A stretch of DNA of 64,000 nucleotides from Euprymna scolopes. Lineage: Eukaryota. The stretch lies in assembly GCA_053919585.1 (NCBI GenBank), contig CM132789.1; one strand, given 5' to 3'. The notes beneath the pieces are model-generated. The model saw nothing but the letters and a program-made list of their open reading frames with translations, had not been told where the DNA came from and ran no database searches. Each line of letters opens with the position of its first letter. Within the stretch, counting starts at the first letter, position 1. The translations under genes were made by a program, and so were the position numbers. This document shows, piece after piece, positions 1,035 to 8,112 of this stretch.

Positions 1035-2230
1035 TTACATATCAGATAAAATGCATTTGTAAAGACGTTTAATATGCAAGTAATTTTTTTTAAATCATTA
1101 TATATTTTTTTTTATTTTCACTTTTCTTATTAATTTTGGATAGTACAACATCTGCCATCAGAGAAAGTGCCCTCTGCCCCATTAAAAAAAACGTTTTTCT
1201 TTTATTTTTTTTATTGCAATTAAAAATGTCCTTATTAATAAATCTTAAAAACACAAAACTTATGTATTTATGATCTTAAAAAGATTTAAATCAACAAAAG
1301 AATATATAGTTACATTTGACACACAATATATTTTTATCAAAGGAAATATAACAGCATGTCATTACGTCATATACTTAAAAACATTACATGTTAAGAAATA
1401 GATTTCATGATCTGTTTGAATTTGTACTTAAATGAATTCAAAAAATTCAGGAAGATTGAATTATCTGTGAAACTGCAGTAACATGCTAAAAGTCATTTTA
1501 TTATTATTATTATTATTATTATGTACATTTTTCTTTCCTTTTTTACTTCTGATTTTTTTAATTCAAATTTCTGCTTCAATTACACCCCCCCCCTCCGCTT
1601 TTATCAATTAATATTTGTTTGTTTGTCTGTCAGCCTTTTACTTCTGGTTTGATTCATTGTTTCTAACCCAAATTTAATCATACAACTTGCATAGCTGTTT
1701 AAAATTTGGTTATTGTTTTCTTGTAACTTCTGTTCCTGATTTCTTTTTAAAATAATGCCACATTTTTTCCTGTTTCAGTTGGCAAATTCTCATCAATTTT
1801 CAATGAAACATCACTTCTTGGTTGTTTTTTTAAATAAGTTTAGACATAAATCTTGTCATAATCATAATTTTCTTTAATCATAAATATAATCAAAATATTA
1901 GAATAGCAGCTACTAAAAACCGGGGTTTTATAATTTAATTTATTTTGCAAAAGCAGTTCTTGATTTCCTTTTATACTATACATATTTTATTCAGATTGTT
2001 TTGTTTTTTTATCACATTTTAGTCATTGTACTCTAGTCTTCTTTGAATGCCATTCATCATAATTGTTAACTTCATAGAAATTTCGAATTGAACGCTTTAT
2101 TTAATCCACTGCTCACATGCCACATTCTGCACTTTTTACATACATACTATCAGTTAATGCTTTTTGTGATATTTAGTAACCATCGAGAAATTTCAAGCTG
2201 AACTCTTGAGCCAGTCATGTGACTAAAATA

Positions 2231-2761
2231 CGAGGGACGTTCCAAAAGTAACGCCTTTTATTTTTTATTCTGCCAGAATGGATCAGAGGGGGATTGCAAA
2301 TTGCATTTTTATGATGACTGAATTTGTACATTCATGACCTGAAAGTTTCATCTCTCTGTTGCAGATATTGATGGTGTGAGACTCTAAGAAAGCAACCCCT
2401 GTCATGGATGTGCATCAGCGATGTGTCATTGAATACTCCATGCAGAAAAAATTGAACCAATCAATATTGTTAAATGTTTATGAAGCCAATACAGTTGATG
2501 TCAGCACAGTTAGGAGATGAGTTCATCGATTTCAAAATGGCGACAGATGTGAGTGACAAAGCGTGCTCTGGACTTTGACGACTGAAGCATTGTTCATTGC
2601 TGGCAAAAGTGTATTGAGAATGGTGACAACTATGTAAAAAAATAAGTTCTGTAGCACAAAAGCGCACTCGTTTTAATGGCGCCATTTCCGTCTTCATAGC
2701 TCTTGAACGTTTTTGTTTTGGAGTTAAAAAATAGAAGTCTTTACTTTTGGAATGATCTGCA
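2231..2761 (+). mobile_element. Non-autonomous mariner-derived element (~530 bp)
   Basis: TA|CGAGGGACGTTCCAAAAGTAA ... TTACTTTTGGAATGATC inverted termini; second copy at 27857-28394. Confidence 0.75.
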
Positions 2762-3644
2762 TATGTTGATGATATCTTCCTGCATTTACCTCGCCAGGGA
2801 GATGTCCAACATGTCATCCAAATAAGAGTATCCTAGATTTGAATAAAAAAATTTCAAATGATTAAAAAAATACTTCTGGAAACCCCAAGATCATCCTTTT
2901 TCACAAATCAATATGACGTCATAGAAAGCTAAATAATTTCTCTTTATTTACTTTTTTTTGGTAATTTAAATATTTCAATTGGAATAGATAATATTAATCA
3001 GGAATATAGTAAAACACACTTGAAGAGTGAATAAAATAAACTATGAAATCGGAGCAAAGTGTTTGGATAAGTCCAATATATATCTATTAGTCTACTAAAT
3101 GTAGGTTAATCAACGTTTGTTTTTCTAAGGCGTTTCCCCATAATATTATAATAACACAAAATACATGCTAAAATATACTTTAGTTCTAAGATTGAGTTGC
3201 ATTTGAAAAGAAAATTCTGTCTTGCTTTTTATAATTAGCTGTAATTTCTAATCGACTCAACAAGTCACCCATCTTTCTTTAGCTATCTATGTATTTCTCT
3301 TGCCCCCTCTCATCTATTCAATCACTCTCTAACATTTTTTGATGTTTCTGTGAGTATTTAGAGAAAAAGTGACTCTTTTTTCAGTGTTGTCGTTTAACTT
3401 ACATAAGTGTGTTTTTACACACTACAAACACATATAAATTAGATTTAAAATAAGGAATCTTTTTTTTTTATATGTAAGAATAATAAACAATACTAATACT
3501 TCTATATAATGATGGTGATGATGATATATTCTACATCCTACATTCGTTGCCTTTTTACATATCTCCTATCAGTTAATGTTGCCAGTAAATCTGTTTACAA
3601 AGGCCGCCACAAAGAAAGTGTTGTACTAGAAAATGACCCCTGTC

Positions 3645-4335
3645 TGAAAGTATCCTGTATCTATACTAAGCTACCATTCACCCGTGCATGGAGTATTGTT
3701 GTCACATCTGGGCTGGTGCATCCACCACTAATCTCTCCTTCTTAGACACGGTCTAAAAAAGTCTCCAATCTAATAGGTACCTCACTATCTACCAAGCTCC
3801 AACTTCTGTCCCATCGCCACAATGTTGCATCCCTGTGCCTGTTTTATGAGTATTTTAATGTAATATGCGCTGATAAGCTCAATGCAGTTATACCCCCCCC
3901 CCCGCGATGTACATCTCATCCCTTCGCTATAGAGATCCCTAAATACCGGAAAGCCTTCTACTCTAATAACTTCTTCTCTCGGACTGCTAGCCTTTAAAAT
4001 TCTCTCTCTGTTTCCTGCTTCCCTGACTGTACTGACATGCAGAAGTTTAAATGTAATGTGGACAGATATCTTGCTCATCTCCTTACATAGTCACCTGTTC
4101 CAAATAATAGCCCTTATGTCAAAGTGGTAATATGCCTTGTTTGGGCTAAACAAGAGCTTCTTCCCTCAGACTGCTAGACTTTGGAATTCCCTTCCTCCTT
4201 CACATATAGAAGTTTAAATTTAATGTGAACAGACATCTCACTCATCTCCTTACATAGTCCCCTGTAAACATGGTCCCAGATAGTAGCCCCTTATGCCTAA
4301 CTGGCAATATGACTTGTTATCAAAAAAAAAAAAGA
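3645..4335 (+). mobile_element. LINE 3' fragment with duplicated 3' tail and poly(A)
   Basis: ILYLY..IHPCMEYCCHIWAGA remnant. The tail CATCTCCTTACATAGTC..GCCCTTATG occurs twice. Related copies at ~5225-5465 (-), 42270-42800 (+) and 52925-53290 (-). Confidence 0.8.
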
Positions 4336-5510
4336 TAAGAGTAAAAAAAAAAGAATAAAATAGTTGGTAACGATTGCCTTGTTGGGAACCACCAGAATTT
4401 TGAAGAAAGTGCTGGAAGACTGAGAGACCCGGATGCTGATAGACTGTTCATTTGTTATGATCCGCCTATCAGTATAAAACCAGCAATATTAACAGCCAAA
4501 CACAAAATCTGAATAAAATAATAATAGACTTATTATTTTAATTATGCAAGAACAATGTCATAAAAGAGATGTCACAGTTTATGAATTGTTGAATGAAAAT
4601 AAAGTAGAATGAATAGTAACAGTGGTTGTGACCCAATGAATCACAGATATGTCTACTATGTTTATAAAACAATATTATTTTTATTGAAACTTAAAATGGA
4701 ATTAGTCCTTAAAATAAGGGATGCCCAACGAAGCATAACTAATTAAACACACTTTGCCTGTTTGTAAAACATGTTTTTACTCGGGCTCTTTCAACAAAAG
4801 ATAAAACAGAAAATGCATTGACCCCTTGATGTAAACAAAAATCCCAACATTATAAAAAAAAGATAAGACATTCTTTATTTTCGCACATCAATGCATTTAT
4901 TAAAAACATTTCTTTCAATTCGCAATCATTAAAAGAAAACAAAACGATTGTTTAGACTTATTTTCTTTATTTGCTCAGGCTTGCAAATCAAATAATACAC
5001 TTTATATAGAATGATTCAGTGTTATTTTATTTATTCCATAATAAATCCCGCATGATAAACTTTGTTTTCAATCTTTCCTTCTTGACTTTATTTATTTTTA
5101 AACCTTTTTCACTCAAAACAAGGCATATTACCACTTGGAACATAAGGGAATAATTTGGGATCCTGTCTAGCCGGGACTATGGGGAGTTATGCAACGAGAT
5201 GTTTTTTTACATTACATTTAAACTTTTGCTTGTCAGTACAGTCAGTTAAGCAGGAAACAGTGAGGGAATTCAGAAGTCCAGGAATTCGAGGGAAGAAACT
5301 ATTAGAGTAGAAGGCTTTCCAGCATCTATGGGCCTCAATAATGAAGGGGTAGGATTTTGCTGCTTGTTGAGTTAATTGGAAGTACAGATGCTATGAGTTC
5401 GTCAGAGCACATTTCTATTAAAATTTCATGAATATCCAACAGTTCATGTCCAACACCTGCCAGCATGTAAACGAATATTATATCGAACATTGTGATGATA
5501 ATGATGACAG

Positions 5511-7880
5511 CACAGTGGGCCCAGATTGCGAAACTTTGGAAATAGGATTGTGACACAGATTTTACTGACTTATGCGACCTAAAAAAGGCTTATTACGTCA
5601 GAATAATCATTTACAACACTGTGAGTACTATCGGAGCATAAATAAAATGGTTTCCAGGCTATTTTTCCCATTTTGGGGTCCAAGAATATCCCCGACTTTA
5701 GTCGGATTTGGACCTTATAATTCACCCTCGTGCGTGCATTCCAAAATTCTCAATGACTATCCATTGTATTTTTCTGAAATTTTGCATGGAGTTACACTTT
5801 TATAAGGGGAAATGTAACATTCTCAGATTTTTGAAAATTATTGATATGTATGTCTATTTAGTGGTTTTCCATGATGCTGAACTCAAAAATGGATGTTTTA
5901 CACCCGAAACTGCGCTGTTTGCCCATTTTCAGTAAGTTCCGGGGTCCCTGAGAGGGCCACAATAGGTCAAAATGACCTAAATTGGTCGAACATGACACAT
6001 TTGAGCCTGTAACTTTCGATCCATTCATTTTATTTTTCTGAAACTAATGGCTAAGATCAAAGAGAAAAAAGATCAAGAAAAAAGACAAAGCATTCCAACA
6101 AGCTGAACAAGGCATTGCAAATATGATTTACAATATACTAGGGAAACAATGAATAAAACGACTCTTACCAATACATGGGTCAGTGAAATCTATGCAGAAC
6201 AATACCCATTTCATGGTAGACAATAGAATTGCATTAATTCAAAAGAATATCCTCTCCAAGAAAATAATACCATCTTTTTGGGAGGTTGAACAGTCTAGCA
6301 TGTGAACGAATAGTGTGATCAGTGGCACCACATTCTGTGCAATATTTCGGATGCTGGATTCGTGCACTCAACTGACATATGACAGAATCAGATCGTTCTA
6401 ATAACCTGCTCATCACATCTGTCAGCTGTGCAATAGGTGAGATTTTCCGAGACAAAAACTGGAGATAGTTCCGAATATCTTTGTTGTTGGCTTCTAAGCA
6501 TTCCTCAGACATACCTCCAAGACCGTGACCGTCATTCAAACCAATCAACTCGACTGAGTGATGAAGTGTTCCATGCAAAGTTTGGTTGATCCTGATCCAA
6601 GGAAAATTGTCGATTATGTTGTATGTAGCTGTGTCACATAAGTCCTTAAGCTTGGTCAAGTCAACTTTCTGTGTAGACGACACAACAGACAGAATGGTGG
6701 AAAGTTGGCGATGCAGAAGGAGAATGTTTTCTTGATGTTTAATGGAGGAACGACCCGAGAGCAACTCTGTGATGGCACAGAGTACCTCCTCAGAGAAAAA
6801 TCGTGTCCCCTGGTTACCATCTGTTGATGTCCCACATTTTTCATTTGCTTTGTTGCATCGATCGATGTCCTGTGGCATGAAGAATCGCATCAAGTACTCT
6901 TTCTCTGGATTGCCGAATTGGTTCACCAAGTGGTCCAGATTTCTGGACCCAATTCTTGTAATCTATATGACATCGATACAGAACTTTCAAAAACCAATGA
7001 AGAGGTTATATTGATTATTCTTTGAGTTTTCCTTTTTTTTTGTGGAAAATTTTTGTCTTTAGGGGAAAATAGGGAGGAAATAATGCTATTTTTGTCAGAT
7101 TTTAGAGAAAAATTCCCCAATTTCTCCTTTTTTACATTGCCTTAAGACCAATTATCCTCTTTATATGCTCCTCCCACTTTCCTAAAACAATCAGGAACAT
7201 GTTAAATCTTTTTTTTTTGTCCCTTAGTGTAATTTTTGGGGATTTTTGCTGCGTTGAGTTATTGGAGCTCTGATTTTTTCATCCGAAACCTGTGACATTG
7301 GCTCTGAAATTGATCAGCAATAAACTAAAAAACGGCTGAGAGTCACATCATAAAACTGCCAGATTCTGAAAGTGTAAAGATTGTACTTTCAGAAAATACT
7401 ATACTTTGATATGTGAGGAATAGCCGTTTTTGACTTATTTTGGATTGAAGGTCCGGGTTTAGTCAATTTCACCCCCCCCCCGAAAAACAGCAATTTATAT
7501 GCAAATTTTTCTCAAATTTCTCCATGAAATGCTGAATTTTTCATATACTCTAATCTTTTGAAAGCAATTATTCTTCTGGTATGATCCCTTCACAACCACA
7601 AACCCATAGAAAAAGAATAAACTGTCTTTTATAGCAATTTTTGGCCATTTTAGGGTATTTTTTTGTAAATGCTTGGATTTAGAGCAGCAATCTCTTGGTT
7701 ACAGTGCACGCGATCTGGGCAACTTCAAAATATCATAAAACAACTTCTAGTTGAGCTCTGCACTTAATTTTTTTTTTTTTTTGTTTTTTAGGAAATTTAA
7801 TGCAGATTTGGAATATGCTAATTGTGAACAAAAATGAGAGAATATTTTTTTGGCCTATTTCCACCTCTGGGCCCACTGTG
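5511..7880 (-). mobile_element. Transib/RAG1-like DNA transposon, internally deleted
   Basis: 15-bp terminal inverted repeats CACAGTGGGCCCAGA (5511-5525 and 7866-7880), flanked by an identical 5-bp TSD GACAG (5506-5510, 7881-7885). Encodes a Transib-like transposase C-terminal half. Confidence 0.93.
6234..6929 (-). pseudogene. Transib/RAG1-like transposase, C-terminal half (open frame, N-terminal half missing)
   Basis: GTSTDGNQGTRFF resembles Transib GxxNDGNTARRFF. TLHGTLHH..GLGGMSEECLEANNKDIR..SRK..DVMSRLLERSD resembles RAG1 YFHKTLAH..SEGNESGNK (two Zn-binding His and the catalytic Glu). Ends with CTECGATDHTIRSH. Confidence 0.88.
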
Positions 7881-8112
7881 GACAGGTCATGATGTTAACG
7901 GGTACAACGTCTCACCAAATTTCGCCCATGCTGTTTTCACTCTTGTGCTTGTATTAAGTTTACATGCTCAACCTGCTCTCAGCATATCTCCTAAGTAGGA
8001 GAGTTTACTTTATGAAAACTATATATAAAAAAAATTGTTTCAATTAACTTTGAGAAGTTGATATCAGAAGAAATTTAATGTTTTTTTTTTTTTTTTACAA
8101 TCATCTCCCCGT

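What the first reader, a model, noticed from the sequence alone, without database searches (positions are those of the whole stretch)
5511..7880. RAG-like transposon with exact RSS heptamers and asymmetric bipartite ends (19/10 spacing)
Seen: both ends start with CACAGTG, the exact V(D)J RSS heptamer, and both carry an identical second block TGGAAATAGG. That block lies 19 nt after the heptamer at the left end (5537-5546) but 10 nt after it at the right end (7854-7863), a 9-nt offset, close to one helical turn. The right end continues CCAAAAAAA, loosely nonamer-like, 20 nt from the heptamer. The 5-bp TSD GACAG is perfect. Known: Transib and ProtoRAG elements have CAC-starting TIRs and 5-bp TSDs, and RAG follows a 12/23 rule. 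Inference: this family may use an asymmetric end-pairing rule analogous to 12/23, which would make it informative for RAG evolution.
Basis: partly seen in the sequence, partly recalled or inferred. Interest (0 to 1): 0.85.

Follow-up and report, generated by a model that had tools for sequence, protein, structure and literature searches.

The report
Deleted Transib transposon, conserved asymmetric ends
This is a broken, recently inserted copy of a Transib jumping gene (the transposon group related to the antibody-gene recombinase RAG1) whose two ends carry the same 9-letter signal at spacings 9 bases apart; the asymmetry is real and conserved across the family, but asymmetry of this kind has been published for Transib elements since 2005.

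Summary
The element spans 5511-7880, with a perfect 15-nt inverted end starting CACAGTG, a perfect GACAG duplication, and TGGAAATAG(G) 19 nt after the heptamer at one end and 10 nt after it at the other. It is a non-autonomous Transib. Only the last ~250 residues of a ~720-aa transposase remain (6237-6996, minus strand, one frameshift), and there is no RAG2-like gene. A contig from a public run of the best-matching organism joins 5505 to 7881 exactly, which is an empty-site allele, so the insertion is polymorphic and probably young.

The 9-nt offset is not a private indel. Five independent complete relatives with their own perfect 5-bp duplications all have 10 nt at the transposase-upstream end and 19 nt at the downstream end. 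Eight of eight 5' ends show 10 nt, and nine of ten 3' ends show 19 nt (one shows 18). The spacer sequence itself varies. A collection scan allowing any gap from 0 to 20 returned only these two spacings.

The idea is not new. Kapitonov & Jurka 2005 and Tao et al. 2022 already describe Transibs with RSS12-like 5' ends and RSS23-like 3' ends, so this is a new member of a known kind. Whether the transposase enforces unlike-end pairing remains untested. The scan noted the same end architecture before on another piece of this genome (s1-272033).

The parts
5506..5510 (.). Target-site duplication GACAG, left copy
   Evidence: Identical to 7881-7885. The empty-site contig keeps a single copy.
5511..5517 (+). 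Heptamer CACAGTG of the 3' end (3' in the transposase sense)
   Evidence: Conserved in relatives.
5518..5525 (+). GGCCCAGA, a conserved block next to the heptamer (in the position of TR2), 3' end
   Evidence: Part of the 15-nt perfect TIR (I6). Near-invariant in 18 ends.
5526..5536 (+). 11-nt variable spacer of the 3' end
   Evidence: Its length is fixed at 11 nt in 9 of 10 3' ends (10 nt in L005) while its sequence varies.
5537..5545 (+). Distal 9-mer TGGAAATAG, 3' end, 19 nt after the heptamer
5661..6095 (.). Very high-copy short repeat(s) inside the 3' non-coding part
   Evidence: Contig depth rises from about 40 to 600-66000, with many loose ends at 5698-6045. A 21-nt direct repeat lies at 5759 and 6023 (D12).
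6237..6866 (-). Transposase remnant, C-terminal part, with the catalytic-Glu motif (LEANNK) and a Cx2Cx4Hx4H tail
   Evidence: HzTransib 6pqn residues 313-463, E 3.6e-14. Matches P0003 residues 515-720 at 56% identity. Alignment A2. Tail motif.
6868..6996 (-). Transposase remnant in another reading frame, separated by a frameshift near 6866-6868
   Evidence: Matches P0003 residues 470-512 at 72% identity.
6996..7001 (.). Internal deletion breakpoint, where transposase homology stops
   Evidence: Near-identical copies in run X3 carry 759 extra letters between 6996 and 7001. The tblastn match ends at 6996.
7002..7844 (-). 5' non-coding region with no similarity to relatives
   Evidence: blastn against complete relatives matches only the terminal 26-40 nt, the coding part and the terminal 35-37 nt.
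7845..7853 (-). CCAAAAAAA A-run, specific to the 5' end
   Evidence: An A-run of 4-7 nt within positions 28-36 is seen in 7 of 8 5' ends (L002 is the exception) and in no 3' end.
7855..7863 (-). Distal 9-mer TGGAAATAG, 5' end, 10 nt after the heptamer
7866..7880 (-). GGCCCAGA block plus heptamer CACAGTG of the 5' end
7881..7885 (.). Target-site duplication GACAG, right copy

Best explanation
Window 5511-7880 is a non-autonomous, internally deleted copy of a Transib cut-and-paste DNA transposon. It inserted recently at a GACAG target and is still absent from some chromosomes of the species. It keeps only the last third of its transposase gene, so a full-length family member must supply the enzyme in trans. 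That enzyme is about 720-733 aa with a RAG1-core fold, a short conserved N-terminal helical segment in the position of the RAG1 nonamer-binding domain, and a C-terminal Cx2Cx4Hx4(H/C) zinc knuckle. Each end is bipartite: a 15-bp block (heptamer CACAGTG plus GGCCCAGA) and a 9-mer TGGAAATAG. The blocks are separated by 2 bp at the transposase-upstream end and 11 bp at the downstream end, which is 10 versus 19 bp when counted from the heptamer. Selection holds these lengths across the family while the spacer sequence drifts. Inferred, not shown: the catalytic core cuts at the flank/heptamer border by nick-hairpin chemistry; the zinc knuckle contacts GGCCCAGA, as the BbRAG1L tail contacts TR2; the N-terminal domain dimer binds the two 9-mers. 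On this reading the 9-bp offset makes a 5'/3' pair fit the synaptic complex better than like pairs. I put that last step at roughly 45%.
For: TIR, TSD and block positions. Empty-site contig 5505 to 7881 in X2. Near-identical copies with other flanks and 759 extra letters at 6996/7001. Transposase homology: HzTransib E 3.6e-14; full-length relative P0003 hits HzTransib at 3e-22, BbRAG1L at 2e-14 and Pfam RAG1 at 1.3e-11. The P0003 model aligns to HzTransib (Z 32.3, rmsd 2.7 over 468 residues) and to mouse RAG1 (Z about 32 over 497 residues). Conserved asymmetry: five independent complete elements (window GACAG, L002 TTACA, L004 AACCC, L006 TAGCA, L011 CTGGG) all have 10 nt upstream and 19 nt downstream of the ORF; 8 of 8 5' ends show 10 nt and 9 of 10 3' ends show 19 nt. 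The gap-tolerant scan (0-20) of metagenome contigs returned only gaps of 2 and 11. DNA similarity among family members is confined to the termini and the coding region. The N-terminal segment is conserved between P0003 and L011, aligns weakly to the BbRAG1L NBD* region, and extends the structural match to RAG1 residue 405 in 4wwx_E. Tail motif.
Against: There is no biochemical evidence for any contact or for a pairing preference. Carmona et al. [quoted passage not shown] The 5' end also carries an A-run that the 3' end lacks, so the ends differ in more than spacing, and it is not settled which block corresponds to the nonamer. The NBD-like assignment rests on a weak alignment (independent E 140) and on one structural row with rmsd 11. 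The related loci come from unnamed assemblies, some of them possibly the same or closely related species. The only uninterrupted ORF with DNA in hand (L011) has Asn at the first catalytic Asp position.
Confidence: 0.85

Rival explanations
1. The asymmetry is conserved because each end has its own job, for example the 5' end overlapping a promoter or A-tract bending site, or the ends binding different numbers of transposase or host-factor molecules. This would resemble P elements, piggyBac, Hermes or Tn7. On this reading there is no rule that the two paired ends must be unlike.
For: A 5'-specific A-run follows the 9-mer in 7 of 8 5' ends and in no 3' end. Unequal spacing of internal binding sites at left and right ends is common in DNA transposons (general knowledge). 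Mouse RAG1 alone ignores 12/23 (PMC4840297).
Against: The same 9-mer sits at both ends and the offset is about one helical turn, as in RSS (11), PflRAGL-A (10) and AanRAGL (9). ProtoRAG has been shown to prefer its asymmetric pair (PMC8289069).
Confidence: 0.4
2. The 3' end carries two tandem binding sites with a 9-bp period: a decayed proximal one at positions 19-24 and the intact TGGAAATAG. The 5' end carries one. On this reading the asymmetry arose from a 9-bp duplication and reflects site number rather than spacing.
For: In L002 and L003 the 3' spacer reads GGAAAC at positions 19-24, exactly where the 5' end has GGAAAT. The window has CGAAAC there.
Against: Other members have CAAAGT, CAATGT, CTAAAC or ACGTAT at that place, which is only 2-3 of 6 matches, so the proximal site is not under visible constraint.
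Confidence: 0.1
3. The 9-nt offset is a private indel of this copy and the family has symmetric ends.
For: None found.
Against: Five independent complete elements plus further single ends share the 10/19 layout. The gap scan found only gaps of 2 and 11. A longer sister element in the same species' runs matches both 36-nt ends.
Confidence: 0.02
4. It is a RAG-like (ProtoRAG-type) transposon that carries, or once carried, both RAG1-like and RAG2-like genes.
For: It has an RSS-identical heptamer and a 5-bp TSD. Its RAG1-type C-terminal zinc knuckle is related to the CCGHC tail.
Against: Complete relatives are only 3.3-4.0 kb and hold one transposase ORF with no other sizeable gene. The best sequence match is HzTransib, not RAG1L.
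Confidence: 0.02

Closest known systems
Transib families with RSS12-like 5' and RSS23-like 3' termini (Transib5 of D. melanogaster; Transib2_AG, TransibN1-N3_AG of A. gambiae; Kapitonov & Jurka 2005, PMC1131882)
   Same: Single-gene Transib with a 5-bp TSD and a CAC-heptamer. The short spacer is at the 5' terminus and the long spacer at the 3' terminus, the same polarity as here.
   Different: Here the spacings are 10/19 (an offset of 9, not about 11). The shared distal block is TGGAAATAG rather than an A-rich nonamer. An 8-bp conserved block abuts the heptamer.
Subgroup I Transibs and AanRAGL of Tao et al. 2022 (PMC9435367)
   Same: Bipartite ends built from two conserved elements separated by unequal spacers. 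AanRAGL has 13 bp + 4/13 + 10 bp, also a 9-bp offset. The CTT1-type Cx2Cx4Hx4C tail is shared, as is extra sequence between the zinc-binding motifs that HzTransib lacks.
   Different: In the close relatives the last zinc ligand is His instead of Cys. Placement in Subgroup I was not tested by phylogeny here. AanRAGL carries a RAG2L gene and this family does not.
PflRAGL-A TIRs (Martin et al. 2023, bioRxiv 10.1101/2023.08.20.553239)
   Same: The layout is heptamer, then a conserved block adjacent to the heptamer (TR2), then an asymmetric spacer, then a distal block. The offset is about one helical turn (10 bp).
   Different: PflRAGL-A is a two-gene RAGL-A transposon with a GRPR/K NBD and an AT-rich nonamer. 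Here there is one gene, an RRK-type basic motif, and a distal block that is not an A-tract.
HzTransib (PDB 6pqn and related entries; Hencken 2012, Liu 2019)
   Same: Closest solved structure (Z 32.3, 23% identity), with the same catalytic-Glu motif and a 5-bp TSD.
   Different: HzTransib TIRs are described as symmetric with little nonamer similarity (PMC8289069, PMC4840297). The solved chain starts where residue 160 of this family's protein aligns, so it lacks the N-terminal segment, and its tail is of another type (CTT2 per Tao 2022).
V(D)J recombination signal sequences (12/23 RSS)
   Same: Identical heptamer CACAGTG, bipartite signals with two spacer classes about one helical turn apart, and an A-run at about position 30 of the 5' end.
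   Different: The spacers are 10/19 rather than 12/23. The second block differs in sequence. These are ends of a mobile element, and a pairing rule has not been demonstrated.

Membership tests
Transib superfamily DNA transposon | 5-bp target-site duplication | tested here: met
   GACAG on both sides. The empty site keeps one copy. Four further elements have perfect 5-bp TSDs.
Transib superfamily DNA transposon | Terminal inverted repeats starting with a CAC heptamer like the RSS heptamer | tested here: met
   CACAGTG at both ends within a 15/15 TIR.
Transib superfamily DNA transposon | Transposase homologous to the RAG1 core with a DDE triad | tested here: met
   The window remnant matches HzTransib at 3.6e-14 with the Glu motif. 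Full-length P0003 hits Pfam RAG1 at 43.8 bits against a cutoff of 25. D264, D374 and E635 are invariant in A1. Fold match Z 32. The window copy itself lacks the two Asp regions because of the deletion.
Transib superfamily DNA transposon | Single gene with no RAG2-like partner | tested here: met
   Complete elements are 3319-3992 bp with one large ORF or transposase match.
RAGL / ProtoRAG transposon | Convergent RAG1-like and RAG2-like gene pair between the TIRs | tested here: not met
   No second gene and no room for one in the complete relatives.
Subgroup I Transib (Tao et al. 2022) | Asymmetric TIR pair | tested here: met
   10/19 in all complete elements.
Subgroup I Transib (Tao et al. 2022) | CTT1-type C-terminal tail (Cx2Cx3GHx4C) | tested here: met
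   Same spacing, Cx2Cx4Hx4H, in the window, L011 and P0003. The canonical GH...C form occurs in more distant relatives. 104 of 201 collected proteins have the motif in their last 80 residues. The last ligand is His in the close relatives, which is a variant.
Subgroup I Transib (Tao et al. 2022) | Region equivalent to RAG1 alpha11-alpha12 in the zinc-binding domain | tested here: inconclusive
   P0003 has 56 residues where HzTransib has 17 between the aligned blocks, and it is collinear with BbRAG1L there. 497 model residues align to RAG1 against 468 to HzTransib. The helices were not mapped residue by residue.
Subgroup I Transib (Tao et al. 2022) | Phylogenetic placement with Subgroup I references, closer to RAG1L | not tested
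   No labelled reference sequences were available in the tools. phmmer scores HzTransib above BbRAG1L.
12/23-rule-type recombination signal pair | Two conserved blocks separated by spacers of two fixed lengths with variable sequence | tested here: met
12/23-rule-type recombination signal pair | A dimeric distal-block-binding domain (NBD) in the enzyme | tested here: inconclusive
   A conserved N-terminal segment is shared by P0003 and L011. It aligns weakly to the BbRAG1L NBD*. One structural row extends to RAG1 residue 405. Three helices are predicted at 99-153.
12/23-rule-type recombination signal pair | Efficient synapsis or cleavage only between unlike ends | not testable with these tools
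   This needs biochemical or cellular assays.

The most novel reading that the evidence does not exclude
A RAG2-less Transib transposase, using an NBD-like N-terminal domain and a CTT1-type zinc knuckle, enforces synapsis of unlike ends (10/19). That would mean a 12/23-type rule existed before RAG2 was acquired. This recently active family, with a polymorphic insertion, near-identical copies and uninterrupted ORFs in public data, would offer a natural system to demonstrate it.
Probability: 0.3. Interest if true: 0.65.

Novelty: new member of a known kind. Interest (0 to 1): 0.4.

Why it matters
The origin of the 12/23 rule is a live question in RAG evolution. Asymmetric Transib ends have been described from sequence since 2005, but in the papers I read only ProtoRAG, which has a RAG2L partner, has been shown to prefer its asymmetric pair. 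This family adds a clear comparative case. The spacer lengths 10 and 19 stay fixed while the transposases diverge to about 50-70% amino-acid identity to the window's remnant and the spacer sequences change. The insertion polymorphism adds evidence of recent mobility. That makes the family a reasonable candidate for the missing biochemical test, but it does not change current understanding.

Tried and rejected
Pfam on the 231-aa remnant gave only a sub-threshold zinc-binding hit; the PDB sequence search was what identified it. No DNA could be fetched for the full-length relative P0003 or for P0172 because the sample files were too large. My first TIR search in L001 and L002 with a strict heptamer pattern found nothing because those copies have mutated heptamers; blastn and a 3-mismatch core search then found the ends. 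5' ends were not found for L001, L003 and L005 (truncated copies), and no end was found in L008. L009 has both end types 669 bp apart but without a matching TSD, so I did not count it as a complete element. L006 and L007 share flanks and count as one insertion. The HzTransib structure paper (Liu et al. 2019) is not held in the library, so what that structure says about end asymmetry could not be checked. I considered L011 as an autonomous copy because it has an uninterrupted 733-aa ORF, but I rejected it as an obviously active one because the position of the first catalytic Asp is Asn. I did not build a phylogeny because labelled Subgroup I and II references were lacking.

Full report
OBSERVATION. 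CACAGTGGGCCCAGA occurs at 5511-5525 on the plus strand and at 7866-7880 on the minus strand. These are the only two matches in 64 kb even when 3 mismatches are allowed (inverted pair I6). GACAG flanks both ends, at 5506-5510 and 7881-7885. TGGAAATAGG occurs only twice in the window, at 5537-5546 (+) and 7854-7863 (-). That places it 19 nt after the heptamer on the left and 10 nt after it on the right. The right end continues with CCAAAAAAA (7845-7853, minus strand).

WHAT IT IS. The 231-codon ORF at 6234-6929 (minus strand) matches the Helicoverpa zea Transib transposase (PDB 6pqn, residues 313-463, E 3.6e-14), and the match covers the catalytic-glutamate motif. A library-wide HMMER search found 979 relatives, among them a full-length 720-aa protein, P0003. 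P0003 matches HzTransib (3e-22), amphioxus RAG1L 6b40 (2e-14), zebrafish and mouse RAG1, and Pfam RAG1 above its cutoff. An AlphaFold model of P0003 (pLDDT 81) superposes on HzTransib (Z 32.3, rmsd 2.7 A over 468 residues) and on mouse RAG1 (Z about 32 over 497 residues).

In the window, tblastn with P0003 finds only residues 470-720. These lie at 6996-6868 and 6866-6237 in two reading frames, so there is a frameshift near 6866-6868. The copy therefore lacks the N-terminal two thirds of the transposase, including both catalytic aspartates, and is non-autonomous. In the transposase sense, the right end (7880) is the 5' end and the left end (5511) is the 3' end.

EVIDENCE FROM PUBLIC READS. I laid Logan contigs of four DNA runs on 5400-8000.
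- One contig of run X2 (organism A, the best holder) joins 5505 directly to 7881. It skips 2375 nt, which is the element plus one GACAG, and 5 letters fit either side. This is the empty target site, so the insertion is polymorphic. It also confirms the element boundaries independently.
- Contigs about 99% identical to 5510-6996 and 7001-7880 run into other flanks. In X3 they carry 759 extra letters between 6996 and 7001, exactly where the transposase homology stops. Longer near-identical copies therefore exist, and the window copy is a deletion derivative.
- Contigs of 3.6-4.0 kb in three runs match only 5510-5545, 6443-6611 (about 77% identity) and 7845-7880. This is a longer sister element that shares both terminal 36-nt stretches.
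- The stretch 5661-6095 contains very high-copy repeats.

IS THE 10/19 SPACING FIXED? Yes. I fetched DNA around related proteins from four ENA assemblies and located ends with a 3-mismatch search for the 15-mer.

I also scanned JGI metagenome contigs for the 15-mer followed by the 9-mer with any gap from 0 to 20. The four exact matches had gaps of only 2 or 11.

Five independent complete elements have perfect 5-bp duplications:
- window: GACAG, 2370 bp
- L002: TTACA, 3694 bp
- L004: AACCC, 3362 bp
- L006: TAGCA, 3319 bp (L007 is a segmental duplicate of this insertion)
- L011: CTGGG, 3992 bp

In all five, the end upstream of the transposase ORF has the 9-mer 10 nt after the heptamer, and the downstream end has it 19 nt after. 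Counting single ends as well, 8 of 8 5' ends show 10 nt and 9 of 10 3' ends show 19 nt (L005 shows 18).

The 11-nt 3' spacer differs in sequence among members, with only a partly conserved AA..TTT. The proteins from these loci are 51-69% identical to the window's remnant, and L011's ORF is 54% identical to P0003. DNA similarity between members is confined to the terminal 26-40 nt, the coding region and the terminal 35-37 nt. Fixed length with drifting sequence is the signature of selection on spacing.

MECHANISM.
Shown:
- cut-and-paste anatomy (TIR, 5-bp TSD, empty site)
- a RAG1-fold DDE transposase in full-length relatives
- conserved bipartite asymmetric ends

Inferred:
- By homology with HzTransib, BbRAGL and RAG, the core nicks at the flank/heptamer border and forms hairpins.
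- The C-terminal tail is a Cx2Cx4Hx4H knuckle. It has the same spacing as the RAG1L CCGHC tail, and more distant relatives carry the canonical GH...C form. It may contact the heptamer-adjacent GGCCCAGA, as the BbRAG1L tail contacts TR2 (cited).
- A conserved N-terminal segment, RRK..F..L..RMKK.RTD...CPELS..QLLGYL, is shared by P0003 and L011 and is predicted as three helices at 99-153. It aligns weakly with the BbRAG1L NBD* region, and in one structural alignment the match extends to RAG1 residue 405. It is the candidate binder of TGGAAATAG.
- A dimer of such a domain holding two 9-mers that sit 9 bp out of register would favour 5'/3' pairs. I put this last step at about 45%.

The main rival is that the ends are differentiated for other reasons, with no pairing rule. 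An A-run of 4-7 nt within positions 28-36 is present in 7 of 8 5' ends and in no 3' end, so the ends differ in more than spacing.

COMPARISON WITH WHAT IS KNOWN. Kapitonov & Jurka 2005 (PMC1131882, section 9) state that several Transib families have 5' and 3' termini similar to RSS12 and RSS23 respectively, and that the 12/23 rule can be derived from Transib structure. The polarity is the same as here.

Tao et al. 2022 (PMC9435367) report that Subgroup I Transibs all have asymmetric TIRs, a CTT1 tail and an alpha11-alpha12-equivalent region. They also report that AanRAGL ends are 13 bp + 4/13 + 10 bp, again a 9-bp offset.

Martin et al. 2023 describe a heptamer, TR2, asymmetric spacer, nonamer layout in PflRAGL-A. 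They note that asymmetric TIRs, the CCGHC tail and the NBD have all been seen in Transibs.

Tao et al. 2019 (PMC8289069) show that ProtoRAG prefers its asymmetric pair.

This family fits Subgroup I on three features: asymmetric ends; a CTT1-like tail with His as the last ligand; and about 39 extra residues relative to HzTransib between the zinc motifs, collinear with BbRAG1L. I ran no phylogeny. It is not a RAGL/ProtoRAG element, because complete members have one gene and no room for a RAG2L gene.

VERDICT. The Transib and asymmetric-ends interpretation is supported. The "RAG-like" label and the novelty are overstated. This is a new member of a known kind, with moderate interest as a possible experimental system. 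Earlier notes of this scan reported the same 19/10 architecture on another piece of this genome (s1-272033, consistent with the sister contigs) and a different Transib with 6/18 spacing that a follow-up judged already described (s1-241398). I checked the literature claim myself.

Noticed in passing
window 5661-6095: Inside the element's 3' non-coding part, contig depth jumps from about 40 to between 600 and 66000, with clustered loose ends at 5698, 5743, 5841, 5847, 5887, 6010 and 6045. A 21-nt direct repeat sits at 5759 and 6023. This points to one or more very abundant short repeats (MITE/SINE-like) that are nested here or shared by the subfamily.
   Followed up: no
window 6237-6335 (minus strand): The C-terminal tail of the transposase remnant is Cx2Cx4Hx4H (CTECGATDHTIRSH). 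Of 104 related proteins with the motif, 70 end in His and 34 in Cys.
   Followed up: partly
L011:926-4917: A complete 3992-bp family member in a JGI metagenome contig, with TSD CTGGG, perfect 15-nt ends and an uninterrupted 733-aa ORF (2220-4421). The position of the first catalytic Asp (D264 of P0003) is Asn in this copy.
   Followed up: partly
L006:4782-8100 and L007:4716-8098: The same insertion (identical flanks, TSD TAGCA) is present twice in one assembly, each time with a THAP-domain gene downstream. This is a segmental duplication that post-dates the insertion, and the copies have since diverged in their end motifs.
   Followed up: no
L009:500-1168: A 669-bp stretch bounded by a 3'-type end (19 nt) and a 5'-type end (10 nt) with no coding capacity and no matching TSD (TGGTA versus CTATG). 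It could be a MITE-like derivative or a rearranged pair of ends.
   Followed up: no
5' ends of window, L004, L006, L007, L009, L010, L011: An A-run of 4-7 nt within positions 28-36 follows the 9-mer at the 5' ends only. It lies at about the place of the A-rich nonamer in the general Transib 5' TIR consensus of Kapitonov & Jurka. Its role (bending site, second binding site or promoter element) is unexplained.
   Followed up: partly
L001:661-2763: hAT-type transposase fragments (DUF4371, Dimer_Tnp_hAT) lie just upstream of the truncated Transib copy, which may explain its missing 5' end.
   Followed up: no
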